Source of the DNA: Octopus bimaculoides
Lineage: Eukaryota
Length of the DNA: 40,197 nt
NCBI RefSeq assembly: GCF_001194135.2
Contig: NC_068996.1
Location: 33,496,202-33,536,398, forward strand
Direction: 5' to 3'
The translations under genes were made by a program, and so were the position numbers. The notes under the pieces are model-generated. The model did no database searches. It had not been told where the DNA came from and saw nothing but the letters and a program-made list of their open reading frames with translations. Below are positions 16,690 through 31,389 of the stretch, in pieces (position 1 is the stretch's first letter; each line of letters starts with the position of its first letter).

Positions 16690-17950
16690 TATACACAAGG
16701 TGATCAAGTTAAATTTGACAGTTTGCAAAAAAGGAAAAGAAAACAATATTCCATCCGAAAATATAAATATATTAAAAAATCAAAATGTATCAATTAGATT
16801 ATAGCTGGGAGATAAGAGTTTACTTAAGTAGCGACCCTCAAGAGAACTCCAGAACCTGGCACATGCATTCCTCATTGTGTCCCTGGGAAGATCTTTGAAT
16901 ACCTTCTTCATCTTGGCCACTATCTCAGCCTTCATGCTGCAGGCAGAATCGTTGGTACCTTTCTCAACCATGTCCCCCGCACAGTAATCTATAAGATTAC
17001 AATTGGAGGAATTAGGAGACCAGTAGTTGGGGCTAGTGGAATTGTAGAAATTCTCCAACAACCACCTCTGGCTCTCTCTGGAGGTATGGTAAGGAGTTGA
17101 ATCCTGCTGCAACAACTGTCTCCAGCCAGGGTTTGACCACAGTCTTCAGCACCTTCACACACTGTCTGCATTGAGCCTAACGCTTCATAGCACAGATGTG
17201 GTACAGCATGACATCATCTTCACTGAAGACACACCCAAAGACCACCACAGATTAGGGGGAACATAGTTTTCATGATAGGTGGGATATGGATTGTAGGTAA
17301 ACTACTTGACGTTCCAGATATTATGCAACTAGTCCTAGTAGAATTTCTTTTCATCTGAGAAGTATCAGGTCATCTCCAGCTCAACAGCATGCCTCAGCTT
17401 GTTTAGGAGCTTCTTTGTCTTCATCAAGTATTTCTTCTTGACCTTGGCTGTCAGAATTTGTCCCTTGAACCTCTTGTACAAGTGGTTCTCATTCAGAACC
17501 AGCTTCATAGTGATGACACCAACATCCATCTCTCTTGCCAAAGCTTAAAAGATTTTCTTGATTGGATCTTCTATCATCTTGTCCTGCAGTTGGATGAATT
17601 CCAGTGTGCAGATATAGTCAGAATGCTTGCAGTGTCTCTTCCTGCTGGTCAAGGCTTTGTAGTCTCCACTGCAACTATCCATGCCATGTTACAGCCTTTG
17701 TAGTATTCCCAGAGCACAGAGCATCAATCATGATGTTGTCTTTTTGATACCTAGTGTGAATCATCATGATACAGATAACTCTTTTCCAGCACTCAGATGA
17801 CTTCCAGTCTGTCATGTCAGCTAACTTTTTCTCAACTACAACTTTAATCTTTATGCTCTCCAGTGCTATTGTTTACCAATACATCAAGCTGTTCCTGAAA
17901 AAAAAAGGAAACATAAACATCGTCAATTTAGCCCAAATGGCCTATATACA
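16690..17950 (-). mobile_element. Decayed Tc1/mariner element, maT/DD37D-like (Bmmar1-like)
   Basis: YFSDEKKF, VVVFGCVFSEDDVM, QQDSTPYHTSRESQRWLLENF...WSPNSSNCNLIDY...RNACARF. Termini approximate; TIRs not clearly resolved. Confidence 0.82.
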
Positions 17951-17966
17951 GCAACAACAGTTAAAG

Positions 17967-18584
17967 TGAGGAAAAGAGAAATTCAAATTGATGTTACGAA
18001 TGTTTCAGTAAACAAACATTTTATATTCTGTACCACATATATTAATATGTGATAAATAAATATATCTAACATGCCATAAAATAAAATAAAATTATAATTA
18101 TCATTTACCTTGTCAGACATCATTATTTGACACAAGCAACTTAAAAGATAAATATGCAATGGAATATAGATTTGTAATACCTCATAAACATGTTAACTTC
18201 ATTCAAACAGATGAGATATAGATGAGTGAATTCCTAAGCATTTGAAATGTCAAAAGGATATATGTTAACTGACCAATTGAAAATAAAAAAAATAAAATTC
18301 ATATGGATCTTTTTAAAAATCAAAACATATACAAAGTCTTTCTTATGACACATCAAATTAACCTCTCTAAACAGGAAATAGTAAAATGTCCTTTAGTTTC
18401 CACTATATACATCTATATATAAATAGACACACTTATGTTATCATGTATATGCACACAAATAGTTTCTCACATTCTTTACAAACATTTACCTTTGATATCA
18501 TAGGTACAATAGTGTATAAATATATATAAATATGTAGACAAACACAAACTAAAATATACATGTGTGAATATATGTAAAATCATA
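17967..18584. repeat. Copy 1 of a ~620-bp local direct duplication (copy 2 at 22242-22867)
   Basis: Collinear alignment by eye along the whole length, offset ~4.26 kb. Confidence 0.92.
18109..18139 (-). other. Candidate 31-nt micro-exon, copy 1
   Basis: Minus strand: ...tctatattccattgcatatttatcttttaag|TTGCTTGTGTCAAATAATGATGTCTGACAAG|gtaaatga. Pyrimidine-rich acceptor and AG|GTAAAT donor. Confidence 0.45.
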
Positions 18585-18626
18585 TAAAAGCATACAGTTA
18601 CCGCAAATATCTATATTTAAGCATAT

Positions 18627-19060
18627 CATCATCATCGTTTAACGTTCGCCTTCCATGCTAGCATGGGTTGGACGATTTGACTGAGGACTGGTGAAACCGG
18701 ATGGCAACACCAGGCTCCAATCTAATTTGGCAGAGTTTCTACAGCTGGATGCCCTTCCTAACGCCAACCACTCAGAGAGTGTAGTGGGTGCTTTTACGTG
18801 TCACCCGCACGAAAACGGCCACGCTCGAAATGGTGTCTTTTATGTGCCACCCGCACAAGAGCCAGTCCAGGGGCACCGGCAACGATCTCGCTCGAAAAAC
18901 CTCATGTGTCACTCGCACAAGAGCCAGTCCATGGGCACTGGCAAGGATCTCGCACGAAAGATATCATGTGTCGCCCGCACATGAGCCAGTCCAGGGGCAC
19001 TGGCAACGATCCCGCTCGAAAGATTTCATGTGTCGCCCGCACATGAGCCAGTCCGGGGGC
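18627..19060 (-). mobile_element. RTE-tail element with internal 62-bp tandem repeats
   Basis: (CAT)n tail and conserved 3' block. 62-bp units start at 18842, 18904, 18966 and 19028. Confidence 0.85.
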
Positions 19061-19251
19061 ACACACACACACACACATACACACACACACACACTCAGTT
19101 ACTCACTCATGAAGAGTTTCCCTTTATAATCAATCTATTGGAGTTTAATTGATGTTTATTCAGTTAACTGAATACTATGTTAACCAGTTTCTAACAGGGA
19201 TTATAATTATCTCCTCAAATTTTATATTCATATATATATATATTATGTAGT

Positions 19252-19641
19252 GTGGAGGCGCAATGGCCCAGTAGTTAGGGCAGCGGACTCATGGTCATAG
19301 GATTGCGGTTTCGATTCCTAGACCGGCATTGTGAGTGTTTATTGAGCGAAAACACCTAAAGCTCCACGAGGCTCCGACATGGGATGGTGGTGAACCCTGC
19401 TGTATTCTTTCTCCACAACTTTCTCTCACTCTTACTTTCTGTTTCTGTTGTGCCTGTAATTCAAAGGGTCAACCTTGTCATACTCTGTGTCACGCTGAAT
19501 ATCCCTGAGAACTACGTTAAGGGTACATGTGTCTGTGGAGTGCTCAACCACTGCACGTTAATTTCACAAGCAGGCTGTTCCGTTAATCGGATCAACTGGA
19601 ATCCTTGACGTCGTAAGCGACGGAGTGCCAACAAAAAAAAA
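19252..19641 (+). mobile_element. Full-length tRNA-derived SINE (second family) with poly(A) tail and 12-bp TSD
   Basis: A box tggcccagtagttagg, B box ggtttcgattcc, A-rich tail. TSD ATATTATGTAGT at 19240-19251 and 19642-19653. Confidence 0.92.
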
Positions 19642-19805
19642 ATATTATGTAGTCATTGGTTATGTCTGGCTAGAAAGTTACCATTGGTTTCACATCTATA
19701 GACAAATCATCAGACCTGCTGGCTGGAGGCACATAATCTTTACTAATGGTTGTAAGAATACAGTATTGGTTAGCAAAGTTGTGAAAAAGAAAAACCCCGA
19801 AATGA

Positions 19806-20410
19806 AATTCTTCAAAGCAAAAACTCCTTCTGGGTGAGATTCAAGTTTTATCTAAAAATGATCAGTTTATGTACAATTTCCATTCAATAGTTAGGAAATG
19901 GGTAAATCCATATCTCCAACAAGAATTTTCTTTCATGAGGGCACCAACTAAAAACTTCACTTTTGGAATTTAAGAGAACCTTCAGATCAAGGATTTTATT
20001 AAGATCTTTGCCCTGTTGAGGTATAATGGTCCAGGCTGTTCATAGAGCTTCCATTTAAACCTGCATGGCATTCCCTCTACTTTAAATGCTGTATATTTGG
20101 CCAATTATATATGGTATCTAAAAGAAGGGGAAATGCCATACACGATTAAATAGAAGCTCTTGGAACAGCTCGGACCATACTTCAATGGGAGAAGACAATA
20201 CAAACTTTGCTTGGTCAAGAGGGTATGGATCCTAAAAAATTCGCCTGATCCAGGGACCGTCTTGAATTTGAAAAATGAAGTGTTTAGTTGATGCCCTCGT
20301 GTCCTCATGAGAGAAAATGTATATAAACTGCCCCTTTTCTGACAAAATTGGAACAGTTTTAAGGGAGATAACTCCATCTCACCCAGAAGGTATTTTTGCT
20401 TTGAAGAATT
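19806..20410. repeat. Spacer-less diverged palindrome centred on TTGG|CCAA (20100/20101)
   Basis: Arms align across ~300 bp. Example: aattcttcaaagcaaaaactccttctgggtgagat (19806) versus atctcacccagaaggtatttttgctttgaagaatt (to 20410). Confidence 0.85.
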
Positions 20411-20878
20411 GACGGCAAAGTGGCCAAGTTCCTCTCGAACATTGGGCCTGATGGAGTCAAAGTGGTTGAGTTCTTTTTGAGTGTTGAGCCTCGTGGAGGT
20501 GAGGTGGCTGATTTCCTTTCGAGTGTTAGGCCTCATAGAGACAATGACCAAGACCTTTGGCATTATGTCATGCTTGAGAAGAAGATCCATCAAACCAAGC
20601 AAAATTGCAGTCCTAGCAGATACCAATGTCATGCAAATTAGCACCCATGTCGGTGGCACATAAACACACTCGGTGTCACACAAATGGCATCTGTGCCAGT
20701 GGCATATAAAAGCACCCATTACACTTTTGGAGTGGTTGGCATTAGGAAGGGCATCCAGCCATAGAAAACCATGACAAATCAGACTGGAGTCTGGTTCAGC
20801 CTTTCAGCGTGCCAGCCCTGGTCAAACCATCCAACCCATGCAAGCTTGGACAACAAACATTGAATGATGATGATGATG
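20411..20878 (+). mobile_element. RTE-tail element with (GAT)n tail
   Basis: gttggcattaggaagggcatccagc...aacccatgcaagc...tgatgatgatgatg. Confidence 0.78.
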
Positions 20879-21179
20879 TATACATATGTATATGCATTCA
20901 ATCACATCTGCATAAATACGTGTGTATGTGTGTGTGTGTGTGAGTGTGTGTGTGCGTGCATGCATGTATGAAAATGTGTATTCAATTATTTATTTAACAC
21001 TTGTTTTCCTGTGCCAGCTTGGAGTAGATACAATGGTTTGGAGCAGGATTTTATAGACATTGTGTTGGATTGAGACTCTATCCATAAGATCCTGCTCCAA
21101 AGCATTTCTGTCATATATATATATATGAGTGTTTGTGTTTTGTGTGCATGTGTATATATCTTCTATCTTTTATTAGTTA

Positions 21180-21790
21180 TTGTAGTGTGGCTATGGTGTG
21201 GCACCACCTTGAAAGCTTTATTCTTGTCAAATGAATCAATCCCAGTAATGGTTTTTTATAGCCTGGTATTCATTTTATCAGTCTCTTTTTGCCAAACGGC
21301 TGTCTTACAGGGATGCAAACAACTCAACACTGATTGCCAAGCAGTGATGGGGAACAAATACAAACACAAAATGCACACACATAAAAATATATACATGCAG
21401 TAATCCCTCGCCATATCACCATTCACCAATTGTGGTTCACTTATCGTGGTTTATTATTTAAGCATATGTTGATTCCTTTGTGGTGTTGTTTTGCATTTAT
21501 AATAAAATAGATATATACAAATAATAAAAATAATGAAATATATATAGTACAATACTGTTTCTACTTTGTGGATTTTCACCTATCGTGGGGGTTTTGGAAT
21601 GTAACGCTCGCAATAGTCAATGAATTACTGTATATATAACAGGCTTCTTTCAGTGTCTGTCTAACAAATCCACTTGCAAGGCTGTCGCTAGCCTGGGGCT
21701 AAAGTTGAAAATAATTGCCCAAGGTACCATGCAGTGGGACACAATCCAAAACCATGTAGTTGGGAAGCAAATTTCTCACCACACAGCTAC
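21180..21790 (-). mobile_element. tRNA-derived SINE (10262 family) split by a MITE insertion
   Basis: 3' domain at ~21180-21380 and head at ~21640-21790 match the two halves of 10262-10697. Confidence 0.72.
21398..21630. mobile_element. Tigger/pogo-like MITE
   Basis: Imperfect TIRs cagtaatccctcgcc / caatgaattactg, right end followed by TA. The right end reverse complement (cagtaattcattgactattgcgagcgttacattccaaaacccccacgatagg) resembles Tigger ends. Confidence 0.65.
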
Positions 21791-22241
21791 AGTATTTAAG
21801 AGCACAGTTGATAATAACTTGTTAAGCTCCAGTATGTTATTATACAGAAGTTAATCCAGGTGGAGCCAACCAACAGGTATGTACATAATCAGGTAAAATG
21901 AACTTATCAAGCAATATATTTTGAATAAAAGTAGAAAAGAGTTAATTTCATACAGTTCAACTAAATTGTACTCAATAGCTGTTTCATTAGCATACATATG
22001 TGCTACAGATGTGAACATACACATAATTTGAAGGAATAATTGTAGATCCAAGCTTTCACCTTGTTAGCATTTCATGTAAGAAACTGGTTAACATAGTTTT
22101 CAGTTAACTGAATAAACATCAGTTAAACTCCAATAGATTATAAAGGGAAGCACTTTGCAAATCTGAAGTATAGTCAAACAGGCATAAGATATGCTTTGCA
22201 GAGTGTAATAATAATTAAGATGAGTACAATAATAATTAAGA

Positions 22242-22867
22242 TGAGGAAAAGAGAAATTCAAATCAAAGTTACAATGTTTCTGTAAATAAGCATTATATAT
22301 TCTGTACCACATATATTGATATGCCATAAAATAAAATAAAATAATAATTATTATTGTTCATTTACCTTGTCAGACATCATTATTTGACACAAGCAACTTA
22401 AAAGATAAATAATGCAATGGAATATAGATTTGTAATACCTCATAAACATGTTAACTACATTCAAACAAATGAGATATAGATAATCCTTCATGAGCGAATT
22501 CCTAAGCATTTGAAATGCCAAAGGGATATATGTTAACTGACCAATAGAAAATAAAAAACAAAATTCACTTGGGTGTTTTTAAAGATCAAAACATATACAA
22601 AGTCTTTCTTATGACACATCAAATTAATTTCCTTAAACATGAAAGAGTAAAATGTCATTTAATTTTGACTATATACGTCTATATATAAAAATAACACACT
22701 TATGTTATCATGTAATATACACACAAACACTTTCCCACTTTCTTTACAAACACTTATATATATTGCACTGTCTTCAATACTGTAGAGAGAATAGTGTATA
22801 AATAAATATATATAAATATACAAACACAAACTAAAAATATACATGTGTGAATATATACAAAACCATA
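22242..22867. repeat. Copy 2 of the ~620-bp local direct duplication
   Basis: Aligns with 17967-18584. Confidence 0.92.
22366..22396 (-). other. Candidate 31-nt micro-exon, copy 2 (identical to copy 1)
   Basis: Same acceptor ttttaag|, same 31 nt and same donor |gtaaatga. Confidence 0.45.
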
Positions 22868-22869
22868 GC

Positions 22870-22963
22870 AGACGACACTTGCCCAAGGTGCCACGCAGTG
22901 GGATTGAACCCGGAACCATGTGGTTTGTAAACAAGCTACTTACCAATCAGCCACTCCTGCGCC
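22870..22963 (-). mobile_element. tRNA-derived SINE head (truncated)
   Basis: Minus strand ggcgcaggagtggctgattggtaagtagcttg...ccgggttcaatcccactgcgtggcaccttgggcaagtgtc. Confidence 0.85.
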
Positions 22964-22970
22964 TATATAT

Positions 22971-23225
22971 AAATTAAAATTCAGAAAATGGAGATGAAGT
23001 AGTAATATAATTTATTAACTGCAAAAATTCAACATGTTCTCTCACAGCTGTTGTGTTTTTGTCCAAAGAATTAAATTCTAGTAATTTATTTGCCTAATAA
23101 AAATGTTTTAATTACTGGAATTTAACTCTTTGGGCAAAAACGCAACAGCTCTAAGAGAACATGCTGAATTTTCGCAGTTAATAAATTATATTAATGCTAC
23201 ATCTCCATTTTCTGAATTTTAATTT
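22971..23225. repeat. MITE-like hairpin with ~116-bp arms and ~23-nt loop
   Basis: 22971-23086 is the reverse complement of 23110-23225 with scattered mismatches. Confidence 0.9.
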
Positions 23226-23688
23226 GAATATTTATAAACCAAGATTTATACTTAAACCTATTNNNNNNNNNNNNNNNNNNNNNNNNNNNNNNNNNNNNNN
23301 NNNNNNNNNNNNNNNNNNNNNNNNNNNNNNNNNNNNNNNNNNNNNNNNNNNNNNNNNNNNNNNNNNNNNNNNNNNNNNNNNNNNNNNNNNNNNNNNNNNN
23401 NNNNNNNNNNNNNNNNNNNNNNNNNNNNNNNNNNNNNNNNNNNNNNNNNNNNNNNNNNNNNNNNNNNNNNNNNNNNNNNNNNNNNNNNNNNNNNNNNNNN
23501 NNNNNNNNNNNNNNNNNNNTATATTATATATTGTATATTTCATATTCTATACCCCACATTGGTTCTGCAGGAATATAAATAAAACATAAAAAACAGACAG
23601 TGTTGGAACTCTTTTAAACTAAATAATATATTCCTCTATACACAATCATACAAAAAAACCCACCTTTTTTGTATTTATTCTTACTCGC

Positions 23689-25495: not shown

Positions 25496-25957
25496 CTGAT
25501 GTGCATGTGTGTGCATCTTTGTGTTTATCTCCCATACTACTTGACAACTATTGTTGGCTTGTTTACTTAATCATTTGATAAAAAAGACCAATGAAATAAG
25601 TACAAAACTTAAAAAATAAATGAGTGAGGTATTTATTAAATTACTTCACATAAGTTGTCCCAAAAAGGTAAGTTAGCATACTTTTACTTATACCCTTCTG
25701 CCTCAATTCACTAATCATTAGCCCATATTGGGAGATAGTCATCTCCAAGGATATGGTGCACTCTTTCTCACTATACATAGGAATAATAGTAAATATAACT
25801 AAAATAAAAGATGTGAAACAACTTAAAACTTTAAGATAACTATTGCATTTATTATAGTGGTAGTAGTAAATGGTAACTGCATAGTGTATTTTTCTCCAAA
25901 TAAGAGAAAAATACTTAATCACTTAGCCATATTAAAAAAATATTTAAGTGAACTTAC

Positions 25958-27211
25958 CACTTTTCCTGGACGAGCCCATGTGTAAACAAAACCTTCCTGA
26001 CATGCAGTAACAATGCATTCTTCTCTAAAAACTAAAGCTGTTAGCCGTTCATGTGCTATTTTTTTAAATATAAGAGGTTCCAACATAGGAATTTCATCTA
26101 AGCGTGGACAAGCTGGAGTTCCAAGTAATTTTAAAGACTCATCAATAGGCCGAACACTGGTTTTCAATATGCTTACTTTTTCACTGCTTCTGCCAGCTAA
26201 ACTTAAATTTCTTTTGTGTTCCTTTTTTTCATGATCCTTATCTTTTCTATCTCCAAGAGACAGTGTGGCAAATTTAGCAGTGATATTCACAGATGCATTT
26301 GGCAGAGAATTTCCATCAACAATTGGTACCTGTGTGTTCAAGGAATTAGATTTTTGAGAATTTGGTAGACTATTACAACGGGACATATAATTAAATGCAT
26401 TTGGTCCAATAATGGTACTTGTCCTTGTACGACCTACAGGTTGCTTAAGAACATCCTCTGTCAAGTCCCATAAGCATAAAAATGTATCCTGGCCAACAGA
26501 ACCAAAACGATATGACGTAAAATTTGTTGTCCGAGTGTCAGAAAAACTTTTATTTGATCCAGTCCTTGATCGATTTAATACACTAGTTTCATGAACAGAG
26601 TTTTCACTTTTCCCTTCATGGTTATGTAATGTCCCATAATGAAATTCTTCATCACTACCACTAAAATCACAGCCTTCTGTATCAGAAAAATTTGATGTGT
26701 AAGGATCAAAGGCTACTACATTAACCCATGACCGATGTCCTTCTCCTCTACAAATTACTTTTTTTTCATGAAATGACCAGACAGTAACTAAATCATCCTC
26801 TCCACCAGTAACAAGATATTTGCCATCAGGAGACCAACATACACAAAGAAGTCCACCAAAATAGCTTTTCATAGATCCAACTAAGTCCATGGAATCATAG
26901 TTGAATACCCTAAGATAACCATCCTGTCCAACAACAGCTAAGAATCGAGAGCAAGGAGAAAATGCAAACTCATTGATAGCACCTTGTCCAACAAGCCAAC
27001 GATATAGTGGATTCCGAGTACTTTTGGTCTTACATGTGTATATTGAATATCCATCTCCCTGTTTGAAAGGCTGATAGTGAGGAGGTGCTCCACAACATGG
27101 GAGCTCTTCATTGTATACATATATTTGTCCACTTGCATGTGAAACTAGAAACTGGTTTCGAGATCCTGGAATCCATTTAATACAAGTAACTTTGCTTTTA
27201 TCTATTAATCT
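25958..27211 (-). CDS. WDR20: WD repeat-containing protein 20 (USP12/USP46 deubiquitinase cofactor), large internal/terminal coding exon, 418 codons, phase 0 at both ends
   Basis: RLIDKSKVTCIKWIPGS...NPLYRWLVGQGAINEFAFSP...KSYFGGLLCVCWSPDGKYLVTGGEDDLVTVWSF...GHRSWVNVVAFDPY...FGSVGQDTFLCLWDL...KIAHERLTALVFREECIVTACQEGFVYTWARPGKV is recognisably WDR20/DMWD family. Acceptor tttatttcag| precedes 27211; donor GTG|gtaagt follows 25958. The ORF-track Met at 27271 is intronic. Read-through ends at 25919. Confidence 0.95.
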
Positions 27212-27628
27212 CTGAAATAAATAAAGAGAAACAACATTACAATAAGGTAAATTAAGATAAAAATACTTCAAAGTTTAATAAAACAAAATGAAAATAATAT
27301 TTAGCATTCTGTATACATTACTCTAAGTGGATATACTGTAGAAAGCTACAAAACTGTAGCACTCATCTTGAGACAGCTTCTCATATAGATGTATAAGTAG
27401 TAGATGAAAAACATCCAGAAGTTGTGAATTTACTAAATCTGGATTTATATGTCTGTGCACATCATCAATAGCAAGCATCTACTATCAACTACATGCATAG
27501 AAAAATTTAACCTCTACTGTTGCAAATAACTAGTGGGCTGGGTAAAAATGGAATTTGTTGGTATCGCTGCTTGGAACAGTATAATTCTACAATAATAACT
27601 GTGACCACTGCTATTTCTAGCATGCTAA

Positions 27629-29619: not shown

Positions 29620-31389
29620 TATACTGGTATATTAAAGAATTTTCATTGTATCAAAAATATTCATTTAACAAACTCTGAAAACTGATAATATTCTTGAAAC
29701 TGTGCCTCGTATCAAAGTTATACAACTATTTTGTGTAAATATGAAATGAAAAAATCATCATCATCATTGTTTAACGTCCGCTTTCCATGCTAGCATGGGT
29801 TGGACGATTTGACTGAGGACTGGTGAAACCGGATGGCAACACCAGCCTCCAATCTGATTTGGCAGAGTTTCTACAGCTGGATGCCCTTCCTAATGCCAAC
29901 CACTCAGTGAGTGTAGTGGGTGCTTTTACGTGTCATCCGCACGAAGGCCAGTCAGGTGGTACTGGTAACGGCCACGCTCAAATGGTGTATTTTATGTGCC
30001 ACCTGTACAAGAGCCAGTCCAGGGGCAATGGCAACGATCTCGCTCGAGAGTCCTATGAAGGCCAGTCAGGCGGTACTGGCAACGGCCACGCTCAAAATGG
30101 TGTATTTTATGTGCCACCCGCACAAGAGCCAGTCCAGGGGCACTGGCAACGATCTCGCTCGAAAATTCTTACACATGTCACGGGCACAAGTGCTAGAAAG
30201 GCGACGCTGGGTACAGGTGCTATCCCGATTTTGCTATTCGCTTGCCCCAATAAGTCTTCGCAAGCTGAATTTCGTGTCCAATGAAGGAGACGACGTTGGC
30301 ACGGTTGCCAGTTGTCGAATTTAGTTCGATTTCACTTGCCTCAACAAGTCTTCGCAAGTGGAGTTTAGTGTCCAATGTAGGAAAGGTACTCATGAGTGGG
30401 CTGGCTACACCCCTGGCAGAAGCCTTGGATTTAGGTCTCACTTGGCTTGCCGGGTCTTCTCACGCACAGCACATTTCCAAAGNNNNNNNNNNNNNNNNNN
30501 NNNNNNNNNNNNNNNNNNNNNNNNNNNNNNNNNNNNNNNNNNNNNNNNNNNNNNNNNNNNNNNNNNNNNNNNNNNNNNNNNNNNNNNNNNNNNNNNNNNN
30601 NNNNNNNNNNNNNNNNNNNNNNNNNNNNNNNNNNNNNNNNNNNNNNNNNNNNNNNNNNNNNNNNNNNNNNNNNNNNNNNNNNNNNNNNNNNNNNNNNNNN
30701 NNNNNNNNNNNNNNNNNNNNNNNNNNNNNNNNNNNNNNNNNNNNNNNNNNNNNNNNNNNNNNNNNNNNNNNNNNNNNNNNNNNNNNNNNNNNNNNNNNNN
30801 NNNNNNNNNNNNNNNNNNNNNNNNNNNNNNNNNNNNNNNNNNNNNNNNNNNNNNNNNNNNNNNNNNNNNNNNNNNNNNNNNNNNNNNNNNNNNNNNNNNN
30901 NNNCAGGCTATTCTTATTCTAGCAGCTATACTTTCAGCGCACCCACCCCTACTACTAACTTGGTCACCCAGATAGCGGAAGCTATCAACTACCTCTAGTT
31001 TTTCTCCCTGGAATGAGACACAAGTTGTTTCCTGTTTGTTTACAGTGTTTATTGCACCTGAACATCTGCCACATACAAAAACTAACTTCCTAGTTAACCT
31101 GCCTTTGATATTGCTATATATATATACTGGTATATTAATGAATTTTCATTTTATTAAAAATATTTATTTAACAAACTCCGGAAACTGATAATATTCTTGA
31201 AATTGTGCCTCATATCAAAGTTATATAGCTATTTTGTGTAATAGCATGCATTTATTCAACACAAAATCACTTAAAAATTATGCTGATATATTAAAAAAAT
31301 TTTAATTTTATCGAAAAATATTCATTTAACAAACTCTGGAAACTGATAACATTCTTGAAATTGTGTCTCATATCAAAGTTATATAGCCA
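29620..31389. repeat. Three copies of a ~120-bp AT-rich unit (29620-29741, 31123-31243, 31279-31389) interrupted by an RTE insertion
   Basis: Shared text such as aaaatattcatttaacaaactctggaaactgataatattcttgaaattgtgcctcatatcaaagttata. Confidence 0.85.
29756..31115 (-). mobile_element. 5'-truncated RTE LINE spanning a gap
   Basis: (CAT)n tail at 29756. After the gap the minus strand reads GEKLEVVDSFRYLGDQVSSRGGCAESIAARIRIA. Confidence 0.85.

What the first reader, a model, noticed from the sequence alone, without database searches (positions are those of the whole stretch)
17967..22867. Duplicated ~620-bp cassette whose most conserved part is a splice-flanked 31-nt micro-exon
Seen: the two copies are identical over 53 nt spanning donor, exon and acceptor, then nearly identical (one 1-nt indel) for ~45 nt more of the acceptor-side intron. 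The outer flanks are visibly more diverged, with indels. Minus-strand exon: TTGCTTGTGTCAAATAATGATGTCTGACAAG. Joined in phase 0 to the WDR20 donor it gives ...ARPGKV-LLVSNNDV*, with the stop 4 nt before the next junction (should escape NMD by the 50-nt rule). In another frame it contains ATG ATG TCT GAC AAG (MMSDK), a possible start exon of a different transcript. Inference: tandem duplicated, possibly mutually exclusive micro-exons under constraint inside otherwise neutral TE-filled DNA.
Basis: partly seen in the sequence, partly recalled or inferred. Interest (0 to 1): 0.7.

Follow-up and report, generated by a model that had tools for sequence, protein, structure and literature searches.

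The report
Duplicated intron piece in octopus WDR20
A roughly 640-base piece of the last intron of the octopus WDR20 gene was copied next to itself. Its middle has stayed nearly identical, most likely because the two copies corrected each other, and nothing available here shows that the 31-base "micro-exon" inside it is ever spliced.

Summary
Window 17952-18584 and 22227-22867 are two direct copies, 82% identical with gaps counted. Both carry the identical 31-nt string with AG/GT flanks on the WDR20 sense strand. Divergence is clearly non-uniform, with a 105-column substitution-free run (P about 5e-5).

The window is Octopus bimaculoides WDR20. The copies lie in its 58-kb last intron. Most of the DNA between them looks like later repeat insertions, so this was probably a tandem duplication.

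The conserved unit is not the exon. It is a block of about 340 nt (4.5% versus 17.8% substitutions). The exon plus splice sites (0/53) cannot be told apart from the rest of my earlier, narrower hand-drawn block (7/161, p=0.2). Indels are not depleted in the block. The acceptor is weak.

None of the nine distinct protein sequences in the octopod/cephalopod WDR20 cluster ends in LLVSNNDV. The known tails are LFTKIESCNDGC and EQLDVLVN.... The exon for the second tail lies 214 nt downstream of micro-exon A. No homolog of the block was found in the Argonauta WDR20 locus or in a more distant cephalopod contig. No RNA family or stable fold matched.

Best reading: an intronic tandem duplication with a gene-conversion patch. 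A real lineage-specific terminal micro-exon is not excluded (about 13%). RNA-seq junctions and the O. sinensis/O. vulgaris introns could not be reached.

The parts
17952..18584 (-). Cassette copy A. It is the distal copy in gene sense, 7.4-8.0 kb downstream of the WDR20 donor at 25958.
   Evidence: Self-BLAST gives 82.35% over 663 columns against 22227-22867. Alignment is A1.
22227..22867 (-). Cassette copy B. It is the proximal copy in gene sense, 3.1-3.7 kb downstream of the donor at 25958. A SINE-like insertion at 22865-22960 interrupts its upstream end, and homology to copy A resumes weakly after it.
18022..18361 (-). Low-divergence segment in copy A, from the maximum-likelihood two-rate segmentation.
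   Evidence: 14/314 substitutions inside against 54/303 outside. 2dLL is 29.7, above all 300 permutations.
22296..22627 (-). Low-divergence segment in copy B.
18094..18198 (-). Substitution-free run in copy A: 105 aligned columns, interrupted only by a 1-nt and a 7-nt indel. The counterpart in copy B is 22344-22456.
   Evidence: (1 of 20000 permutations).
18109..18139 (-). Putative 31-nt micro-exon A, ...cttttaag|TTGCTTGTGTCAAATAATGATGTCTGACAAG|gtaaatga. It would add LLVSNNDV* after ARPGKV.
   Evidence: Crude donor score is 3.4 and acceptor score is -0.35. No transcript evidence was found.
22366..22396 (-). Putative 31-nt micro-exon B, identical to A.
25958..27213 (-). Large WDR20 coding exon ending ...WARPGKV, with donor GTG|gtaagt in phase 0.
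   Evidence: ORF listing. 95% identity to cephalopod WDR20. A transcript alignment ends at 25958.
17847..17894 (-). Coding part of an annotated alternative last exon, EQLDVLVNNSTGEHKD*. Its acceptor is tttttttttcag|GAACAG. It lies 58 nt beyond the end of copy A and 214 nt downstream of micro-exon A's donor. It is not duplicated with copy B.
   Evidence: The tail of an older O. bimaculoides model XP_014769678 and of O. sinensis isoform X2 was located by translated search. Sequence read. Acceptor score 8.7.
18625..19062 (+). SINE-type repeat inserted next to copy A only. It includes 62-nt tandem units at 18842-19062.
   Evidence: Several other copies lie in the window.
19112..22155 (.). 3.04-kb unit bounded by about 85-nt inverted repeats, with further repeats nested inside. 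It fills most of the spacer between the copies.
   Evidence: Inverted repeat I3 is 95% complementary. BLAST 19112-19196 versus 22155-22075 gives 89%. The arms were read.

Best explanation
A roughly 640-750-bp stretch of the 58-kb last intron of Octopus bimaculoides WDR20 was duplicated in tandem. The stretch lies just upstream of a lineage-specific alternative last exon (EQLDVLVN...). SINE and other repeat insertions later pushed the copies 4.27 kb apart.

The outer parts of the copies have diverged at the neutral rate (about 15-18% substitutions). A central patch of about 340 bp has only 4.5%, and none over 105 columns. The most likely cause is ectopic (non-allelic) gene conversion, which repeatedly re-homogenised the two neighbouring direct repeats.

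The 31-nt 'micro-exon' is a splice-site-like string that happens to lie in that patch. It is not shown to be an exon.

Shown: the duplication, its location in the gene, the non-uniform divergence, and the absence of the predicted protein tail from all retrievable gene models and assemblies.

Inferred: the tandem origin, and gene conversion as the cause of the patch.
For: - The window equals CM046616.1 of GCA_001194135.2. The canonical last exon (LFTKIESCNDGC) lies 58 kb downstream of the donor and outside the window.
- There are two copies only, in direct orientation. I saw no terminal inverted repeats or poly(A) tail at the cassette ends when reading; there was no dedicated scan.
- The spacer is mostly later insertions.
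- Each copy has its own private SINE insertion at its upstream end.
- The low-divergence block is far wider than an exon: 314 aligned columns at 4.5% versus 17.8%.
- Exon plus splice sites is not distinguishable from the rest of my hand-drawn central block of columns 446-700, p=0.20.
- The downstream edge of the near-perfect zone coincides with a 23-nt indel, as expected if heterology ends conversion tracts.
- Gap events are not depleted in the block: 4 in about 255 columns versus 6 in about 424. Purifying selection would remove indels at least as efficiently as substitutions.
- No homolog of the block or the 31-mer exists in the complete Argonauta WDR20 locus (113 kb) or in 10 kb downstream of the exon in another cephalopod (BLAST, nhmmer). 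Any function would therefore have to be young, whereas near-perfect 100-300-nt intronic flanks are typical of old regulated exons (general knowledge).
- No protein with the LLVSNNDV tail turned up.
Against: - Gene conversion was not demonstrated. Doing so needs the orthologous copies from O. sinensis or O. vulgaris, or polymorphism data. Those gene ranges were too long for the retrieval tool.
- The 53-nt perfect run is bounded on both sides by indels. It matches the extent of an exon plus its core splice signals closely, and the exon lies only about 19 nt from the centre of the substitution-free zone.
- On my crude scoring, a sense-strand AG..GT pair at least this good occurs about 0.2 times per kb. 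The chance of one falling in the block is therefore only about 3-7%.
- The core shows no GC enrichment that would suggest biased conversion.
- A simple single recent conversion event would also have erased the indels. The model needs short tracts between heterologies, or fast indel turnover in AT-rich DNA.
Confidence: 0.5

Rival explanations
1. The 31-nt strings are real, lineage-specific cassette or alternative-terminal micro-exons of WDR20. Including either one ends the protein as ...ARPGKV-LLVSNNDV*. The surrounding block is conserved because it carries their splicing signals.
For: - AG/GT flanks lie on the gene's sense strand, and the reading frame is phase-compatible and ends in a short tail like the known ones.
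- The perfect 53-nt run spans exactly acceptor tract, exon and donor.
- Only 5 other pairs of equal crude quality lie in 24.9 kb.
- This intron does host lineage-specific alternative last exons with short tails: EQLDVLVN... in Octopus and NFLYIWLKNRSVVY in another cephalopod.
- The donor of copy A lies 214 nt upstream of the strong annotated EQLD acceptor.
Against: - No listed protein model has this tail: O. sinensis X1-X3, two O. bimaculoides models, O. vulgaris, Argonauta and cephalopod transcript or contig assemblies. Nor does any short fragment in the protein collection.
- The acceptor is weak (-0.35 versus 8.7).
- Conservation extends over about 340 nt and is not exon-specific.
- Indels are tolerated 8 nt after the donor and 16 nt before the acceptor.
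- Two identical redundant exons should not both be under strong constraint.
- It is absent from Argonauta and from a more distant cephalopod.
Confidence: 0.13
2. The block of about 340 nt is a functional non-coding element, kept in both copies by selection. Examples would be an intronic splicing or polyadenylation regulator of the adjacent EQLD alternative last exon, or a transcriptional enhancer.
For: Substitutions drop four-fold over more than 300 nt. Copy A lies directly upstream of an annotated alternative last exon.
Against: - Copy B has no exon behind it.
- Indels of 1, 7, 10 and 23 nt lie inside or at the edge of the block.
- No Rfam family reaches threshold and folding z-scores run from -0.6 to +1.1.
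- There is no complementarity to WDR20 exons that would suggest an editing-site partner.
- It is not conserved outside the genus-level lineage.
Confidence: 0.15
3. The cassette is a copy of a dispersed repeat family (a non-autonomous transposable element) that landed twice in the same intron. Its middle is the better conserved part of the family.
For: The intron is full of repeats. Genome-wide copy number could not be measured here.
Against: - There are only two copies in 79 kb of O. bimaculoides. None turned up in 113 kb of Argonauta or 21 kb of another cephalopod, whereas the neighbouring SINE family recurs many times.
- I saw no terminal inverted repeats or poly(A) tail at the ends when reading.
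- The copies share orientation and were probably only about 110-160 nt apart before the later insertions.
- A 56-aa ORF across the core has no relative in the protein collection.
Confidence: 0.1
4. The pattern is chance heterogeneity or an assembly artefact, such as a retained haplotig.
For: Assembly gaps (runs of N) lie close by, for example 23263-23519.
Against: Permutation gives P about 5e-5 for the substitution-free run. The two-rate likelihood exceeds all 300 permutations. At 82% identity, and with different private SINE insertions, the copies are far too diverged to be haplotypes.
Confidence: 0.02

Closest known systems
Ectopic (non-allelic) gene conversion between tandem duplicates, giving patchy concerted evolution
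   Same: There are two direct repeats a few kb apart, and probably adjacent originally. An internal tract of a few hundred bp is far more similar than the flanks. One edge coincides with an indel.
   Different: Conversion is inferred from a single genome. No ortholog or polymorphism data show that the paralogs are closer within the species than between species. Indels persist inside the tract, and no GC bias is visible.
Tandemly duplicated, mutually exclusive exons (for example the Dscam1 exon clusters or vertebrate MXE pairs)
   Same: The candidate exons are tandem, homologous, of equal length and equal phase, and have conserved flanks.
   Different: The two candidates are identical, so they cannot encode alternative peptides. 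They carry an in-frame stop. No transcript evidence exists. Conservation is not exon-centred in a statistically separable way.
Alternative last exons giving short C-terminal tails in cephalopod WDR20 (annotated tails LFTKIESCNDGC and EQLDVLVNSQ/EQLDVLVNNSTGEHKD, plus NFLYIWLKNRSVVY in another species)
   Same: The same phase-0 donor after ...ARPGKV would be used, and the tail would be short (8 aa). The position is in the same intron, 214 nt upstream of one such annotated exon.
   Different: Those tails appear in annotated gene models (the LFTK and EQLD tails) or in assembled transcripts (LFTKIESCGDGC, NFLY). LLVSNNDV appears in none. The annotated EQLD acceptor is strong, and the micro-exon acceptor is weak.
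Neural microexons of the SRRM4/eMIC programme (definition recalled from general knowledge)
   Same: It is a very short candidate exon with highly similar flanking intron sequence and a UGC about 17-19 nt upstream of the AG.
   Different: At 31 nt it is above the usual limit of 27 nt. Its length is not a multiple of three and it contains a stop. It is not conserved in other cephalopods, and no expression data exist.

Membership tests
Tandem duplication with gene-conversion patch | Two paralogous copies, in direct orientation, close together, and not part of a dispersed family | tested here: met
   There are only two copies in the window and in the 79-kb locus. The spacer is mostly later insertions. 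Genome-wide copy number was not testable.
Tandem duplication with gene-conversion patch | A contiguous tract whose divergence is significantly lower than that of the flanks | tested here: met
   4.5% versus 17.8% substitutions. 2dLL is 29.7, above all 300 permutations. The substitution-free run has P about 5e-5.
Tandem duplication with gene-conversion patch | Within the tract, paralogs inside a species are closer to each other than to their orthologs in a sister species | not testable with these tools
   The O. sinensis and O. vulgaris gene ranges exceed the 100-kb retrieval limit. The metagenome scans were empty.
Cassette or alternative-terminal micro-exon | Splice acceptor and donor on the gene's sense strand | tested here: met
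   The sites are ttttaag|...CAAG|gtaaatg. The donor is moderate (3.4) and the acceptor is weak (-0.35, against 8.7 for the annotated neighbour). Five other equal-or-better pairs lie in 24.9 kb (crude position-weight matrices).
Cassette or alternative-terminal micro-exon | Junction-spanning transcripts, or gene models that contain it | tested here: not met
   None of the nine distinct protein sequences in the octopod/cephalopod WDR20 cluster, and no short fragment, ends in LLVSNNDV. Raw RNA-seq could not be queried, so this is only a weak negative.
Cassette or alternative-terminal micro-exon | Conservation centred on, and stronger in, the exon and its splice sites | tested here: inconclusive
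   0/53 versus 7/161 substitutions, p=0.20. The exon lies about 19 nt from the centre of the substitution-free zone, but the low-divergence block is about 340 nt wide.
Cassette or alternative-terminal micro-exon | Presence at the orthologous position in related species | tested here: not met
   It is absent from the complete Argonauta WDR20 locus and from another cephalopod's contig. The closest species could not be examined.
Mutually exclusive tandem exons | Homologous neighbouring exons of the same length and phase | tested here: met
   The two 31-mers are identical.
Mutually exclusive tandem exons | The alternatives encode different peptide segments | tested here: not met
   The sequences are identical, so the products would be identical.
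Transposable element family | Many dispersed copies | tested here: not met
   Two copies in 79 kb, and none in 134 kb from two other cephalopods. This is a limited sample of the genome.
Transposable element family | Terminal hallmarks (terminal inverted repeats, target-site duplications, poly(A) tail, LTRs) | tested here: not met
   I saw no terminal inverted repeat or poly(A) tail when reading the cassette ends. The inverted-repeat list has no pair joining the two ends of either copy. Target-site duplications were not assessed at the cassette ends.
Structured small RNA (miRNA or snoRNA) in an intron | Match to a curated RNA family, or an unusually stable fold | tested here: not met
   No Rfam hit reached threshold in the block. 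Folding z-scores ran from -0.6 to +1.1 on both strands.
Neural microexon | 27 nt or shorter, frame-preserving, deeply conserved (definition recalled from general knowledge) | tested here: not met
   It is 31 nt, contains an in-frame stop, and is absent from other cephalopods.

The most novel reading that the evidence does not exclude
Octopus (sensu stricto) WDR20 has acquired a young 31-nt terminal micro-exon that was then tandemly duplicated. Both copies are kept intact, by selection with or without conversion. They give the USP12/USP46 cofactor a lineage-specific 8-residue C-terminus (LLVSNNDV) that escapes nonsense-mediated decay.
Probability: 0.13. Interest if true: 0.4.

Novelty: new member of a known kind. 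Interest (0 to 1): 0.2.

Why it matters
If the micro-exon were real, it would be a small example of exon birth and duplication in a conserved deubiquitinase cofactor. The host genome is known for unusual RNA-level diversification.

As the evidence stands, the feature is an ordinary intronic tandem duplication with a patch of concerted evolution. Its main value is cautionary: between-paralog identity inside one genome cannot be read as purifying selection, because gene conversion gives the same picture.

Tried and rejected
- **Orthologous introns of the closest species.** O. sinensis and O. vulgaris WDR20 were found, but their gene ranges (131 and 142 kb) exceed the retrieval limit and no DNA was returned.
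- **More distant relatives.** The Argonauta-labelled locus L014 (113 kb) and an ENA cephalopod contig L010 (21 kb) were searched with BLAST word 7, fuzzy matching (up to 6 edits) and nhmmer profiles. Only the flanking SINE and low-complexity DNA matched.
- **Transcript evidence through proteins.** The cluster members and a search with the C-terminal 77 aa plus LLVSNNDV showed no such tail. The collection seems to hold no O. bimaculoides transcript assemblies for this gene, so the negative is weak.
- **ORFs as handles.** A 56-aa ORF across the core found no relatives. Ten window ORFs near the cassette are not in the collection.
- **Metagenome scans.** Two exact-pattern scans found nothing.
- **Structured RNA.** The Rfam and folding checks were negative.
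- **RNA-editing complementary sequence.** The block has no inverted match to WDR20 exons.
- **Recursive splice site.** I rejected this by reading the sequence. The candidate exon starts TTGCTT, so splicing to it would not regenerate a GT donor.
- **Derivation from the canonical last exon.** There is no similarity to L009 around position 69047.
- **Literature.** Searches for WDR20 with octopus and for microexon with cephalopod returned nothing relevant.
- **'MMSDK start exon' idea.** It could not be tested, and nothing supports it.

Full report
**Where this is.** The large minus-strand ORF at 25919-27271 is WDR20. Its translation is 95% identical to a cephalopod WDR20 cluster representative. 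That cluster contains O. bimaculoides, O. sinensis, O. vulgaris and Argonauta hians proteins. Looking up the O. bimaculoides protein returned a 79-kb piece of chromosome CM046616.1 (GCA_001194135.2), stored as locus L009. The window matches it at 100% in reverse orientation, with window position w equal to L009 position 36891-w. A cephalopod transcript aligns to 27213-25958 and stops exactly at 25958. This confirms the phase-0 donor ...CCAGGAAAAGTG|gtaagt.

**Gene context.** The annotated C-terminal tails after ...ARPGKV are of two kinds.
- LFTKIESCNDGC occurs in O. sinensis X1 and X3, O. bimaculoides and O. vulgaris, and as LFTKLESCNDGC in Argonauta. Its exon is at L009 69047, 58 kb downstream of the donor and beyond the window.
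- EQLDVLVNSQ occurs in O. sinensis X2, and EQLDVLVNNSTGEHKD in an older O. bimaculoides model. Its exon is at window 17894-17847 on the minus strand, behind a strong acceptor tttttttttcag.

The second exon lies only 58 nt beyond the end of cassette copy A and 214 nt downstream of the putative donor of micro-exon A. Another cephalopod has a third tail, NFLYIWLKNRSVVY, whose exon is unrelated to anything in this window. The whole finding therefore sits in the last, 58-kb, repeat-rich intron of WDR20, an intron that does host lineage-specific alternative last exons.

**Checking the observation.** The 31-mer occurs exactly twice, at 18109-18139 and 22366-22396 on the minus strand. Self-BLAST aligns 17952-18584 with 22227-22867 at 82.35% over 663 columns. 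There is no third copy in the window or in the 79-kb locus. In the MAFFT alignment A1 the homologous part has 617 aligned columns, 68 substitutions (11%) and 10 gap events. The longest perfect run is 53 nt: 15 nt before the AG, the 31-mer, and 7 nt of donor. Joined to the WDR20 donor, the 31-mer reads LLVSNNDV*, with 4 nt after the stop. The description is confirmed.

**Is the heterogeneity real, and what is its unit?** It is real. The longest substitution-free run is 105 aligned columns (A 18094-18198, B 22344-22456). Only 1 of 20000 random placements of the 68 substitutions reached that length.

The conserved unit is much larger than the exon. An unbiased two-rate likelihood scan places the low-divergence segment at A 18022-18361 / B 22296-22627. 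It has 14/314 = 4.5% substitutions against 54/303 = 17.8% outside, and its 2dLL of 29.7 exceeds the maximum of 20.4 in 300 permutations.

I also drew a narrower central block by hand (alignment columns 446-700). It has 7/214 = 3.3% substitutions against 61/403 = 15.1% in the flanks (Fisher p = 2.5e-6, post hoc). Within it, the 53 nt of exon plus splice sites (0 substitutions) cannot be distinguished from the remaining 161 columns (7 substitutions, p=0.20).

In fairness, the 31-mer lies near the middle of the substitution-free zone, about 19 nt off centre. An exon-centred pattern is not excluded, only unproven.

Gap events behave differently from substitutions. Four of them (10, 1, 7 and 23 nt) lie in or at the edge of the central block of about 255 columns. 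Six lie in about 424 flank columns. Indels have therefore accumulated at the same density everywhere, while substitutions are four- to five-fold depleted in the centre.

**Origin of the two copies.** The 3642 nt between them (18585-22226) hold several repeats.
- A SINE-type repeat at 18625-19062 has many other copies in the window.
- A CA microsatellite follows it.
- A 3.04-kb unit at 19112-22155 is bounded by about 85-nt inverted repeats that are 89-95% complementary, with further repeats nested inside.

If these are insertions, only about 110-160 nt separated the copies originally. That would make this a tandem duplication with a period of about 750 bp. Copy B's upstream end is interrupted by a different SINE-like insertion at 22865-22960, after which weak homology to copy A resumes. 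The SINE insertions therefore post-date the duplication. I saw no terminal inverted repeats or poly(A) tail at the cassette ends when reading, though I ran no dedicated scan. The EQLD exon is not part of the duplicated unit, because homology ends at 17952/22227.

**Is the 31-mer an exon?** I scored splice sites with crude position-weight matrices written from the general metazoan consensus. This is my own approximation, not a trained model.
- The donor CAAG|gtaaat scores 3.4. The real WDR20 donor scores 5.5.
- The acceptor tatttatcttttaag| scores -0.35. The annotated EQLD acceptor scores 8.7.
- In 24.9 kb of this intron's sense strand there are 16 other donors and 133 other acceptors at least as good.
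- Five other AG..GT pairs are spaced 15-60 nt. That is about 0.2 per kb, so the chance of finding one in a 100-340-nt block is about 2-7%.

This is mild support for the exon reading. Against it, none of the nine distinct protein sequences in the WDR20 cluster has the LLVSNNDV tail. The cluster holds O. sinensis X1-X3, two O. bimaculoides models, O. vulgaris, Argonauta and three assembled cephalopod sequences. A search with the last 77 residues plus the predicted tail also found no such fragment. The collection seems to contain no O. bimaculoides transcript assemblies for this gene, so this negative is weak. Raw RNA-seq cannot be queried with these tools.

**Comparative evidence.** The introns of the closest species could not be fetched, because the gene ranges exceed 100 kb. 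The complete WDR20 locus labelled Argonauta hians has a large exon 94% identical at DNA level and a last intron of only 16 kb. It contains no homolog of the cassette, of the block, of the 31-mer (up to 6 edits) or of the EQLD exon. The same is true for 10 kb downstream of the exon in a more distant cephalopod contig. Whatever the block is, it is young.

**Other functions tested.** No Rfam family reaches threshold in the block. The block does not fold better than shuffled sequence on either strand, with z-scores from -0.6 to +1.1. It has no inverted complementarity to WDR20 exons that would suggest an RNA-editing partner. It shows no GC enrichment. It cannot be a recursive splice site, because it starts TTGCTT and would not regenerate a donor.

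**Interpretation.** The simplest account of all this is a young tandem duplication of intronic DNA whose central few hundred bases have been kept alike by gene conversion between the two direct repeats. Several observations point that way.
- The patch is far wider than an exon.
- Its downstream edge falls at a 23-nt heterology.
- Indels are not depleted.
- The element is absent from other cephalopods.
- Two identical, redundant exons give no reason for strong constraint on both.

A young exon with near-perfect 100-300-nt flanks in both copies would be unusual, because such flanks normally mark old, regulated exons (general knowledge). I put this reading at about 0.5.

The alternatives are as follows.
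- A real lineage-specific terminal micro-exon: about 0.13. Its best arguments are the exact fit of the perfect run to exon plus splice signals and the neighbourhood of a genuine alternative last exon.
- Another constrained non-coding element: about 0.15.
- A low-copy repeat family: about 0.1.
- Chance or an assembly artefact: about 0.02.

**What is shown and what is inferred.** Shown: gene identity and structure, the duplication, its statistics, the position of the annotated alternative exon, and the absence of the tail and of deep homologs in everything retrievable. Inferred: the tandem origin (from the repeat content of the spacer) and gene conversion (from the pattern alone). The decisive data are junction reads, the O. 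sinensis and O. vulgaris orthologous copies, and genome-wide copy number. All of these lie outside the tools provided.

Noticed in passing
window 17847-17894 (-), with stop at 17844-17846: This is an annotated alternative last exon of WDR20 (tail EQLDVLVNNSTGEHKD*, and EQLDVLVNSQ* in O. sinensis X2). It lies just beyond cassette copy A, behind a strong acceptor. It is absent from the Argonauta locus, so it appears lineage-specific.
   Followed up: partly
window about 16780-17800 (-): Directly downstream of the EQLD exon the sequence reads like a decayed Tc1/mariner-type transposase, with ...FSDEKKF... and MLQQDSTPYHTS... motifs. Pfam gives only a sub-threshold DDE_3 hit (E=0.023, 15 bits against a cut-off of 28.6). 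The alternative last exon may take its 3' end from this element.
   Followed up: partly
window 19112-22155: A 3.04-kb unit is bounded by about 85-nt inverted repeats (19112-19196 and 22075-22155, 89-95% complementary). Nested inside are SINE fragments and a 600-nt internal inverted repeat (19806-20410). It is probably a DNA-transposon-like insertion. No clear target-site duplication was seen.
   Followed up: partly
window 22965-23231: A near-perfect 267-nt hairpin has 122-nt arms that are 89% complementary, with a 23-nt loop. It lies next to copy B. It draws sub-threshold plant-miRNA Rfam hits (MIR2670, 54 bits against 117) and looks like a MITE or foldback element.
   Followed up: no
window 18842-19062, also 29943-30162: The abundant SINE-type repeat carries an internal 62-nt tandem array of 3 or more units at 87% identity.
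   Followed up: no
window 22207-22245: An 18-nt motif AATAATAATTAAGATGAG is duplicated with a 21-nt period exactly at the downstream boundary of copy B. Copy A has a single version.
   Followed up: no
window 23263-23519 and six other N runs (1799 N in total): Assembly gaps lie close to copy B. The true number of tandem units could differ in a gap-free assembly.
   Followed up: no
L011 (cephalopod transcript), L014 (Argonauta locus): The WDR20 last intron varies from 16 kb (Argonauta) to 58 kb (O. bimaculoides). Different cephalopods use different, unrelated alternative last exons after the same ...ARPGKV donor.
   Followed up: partly
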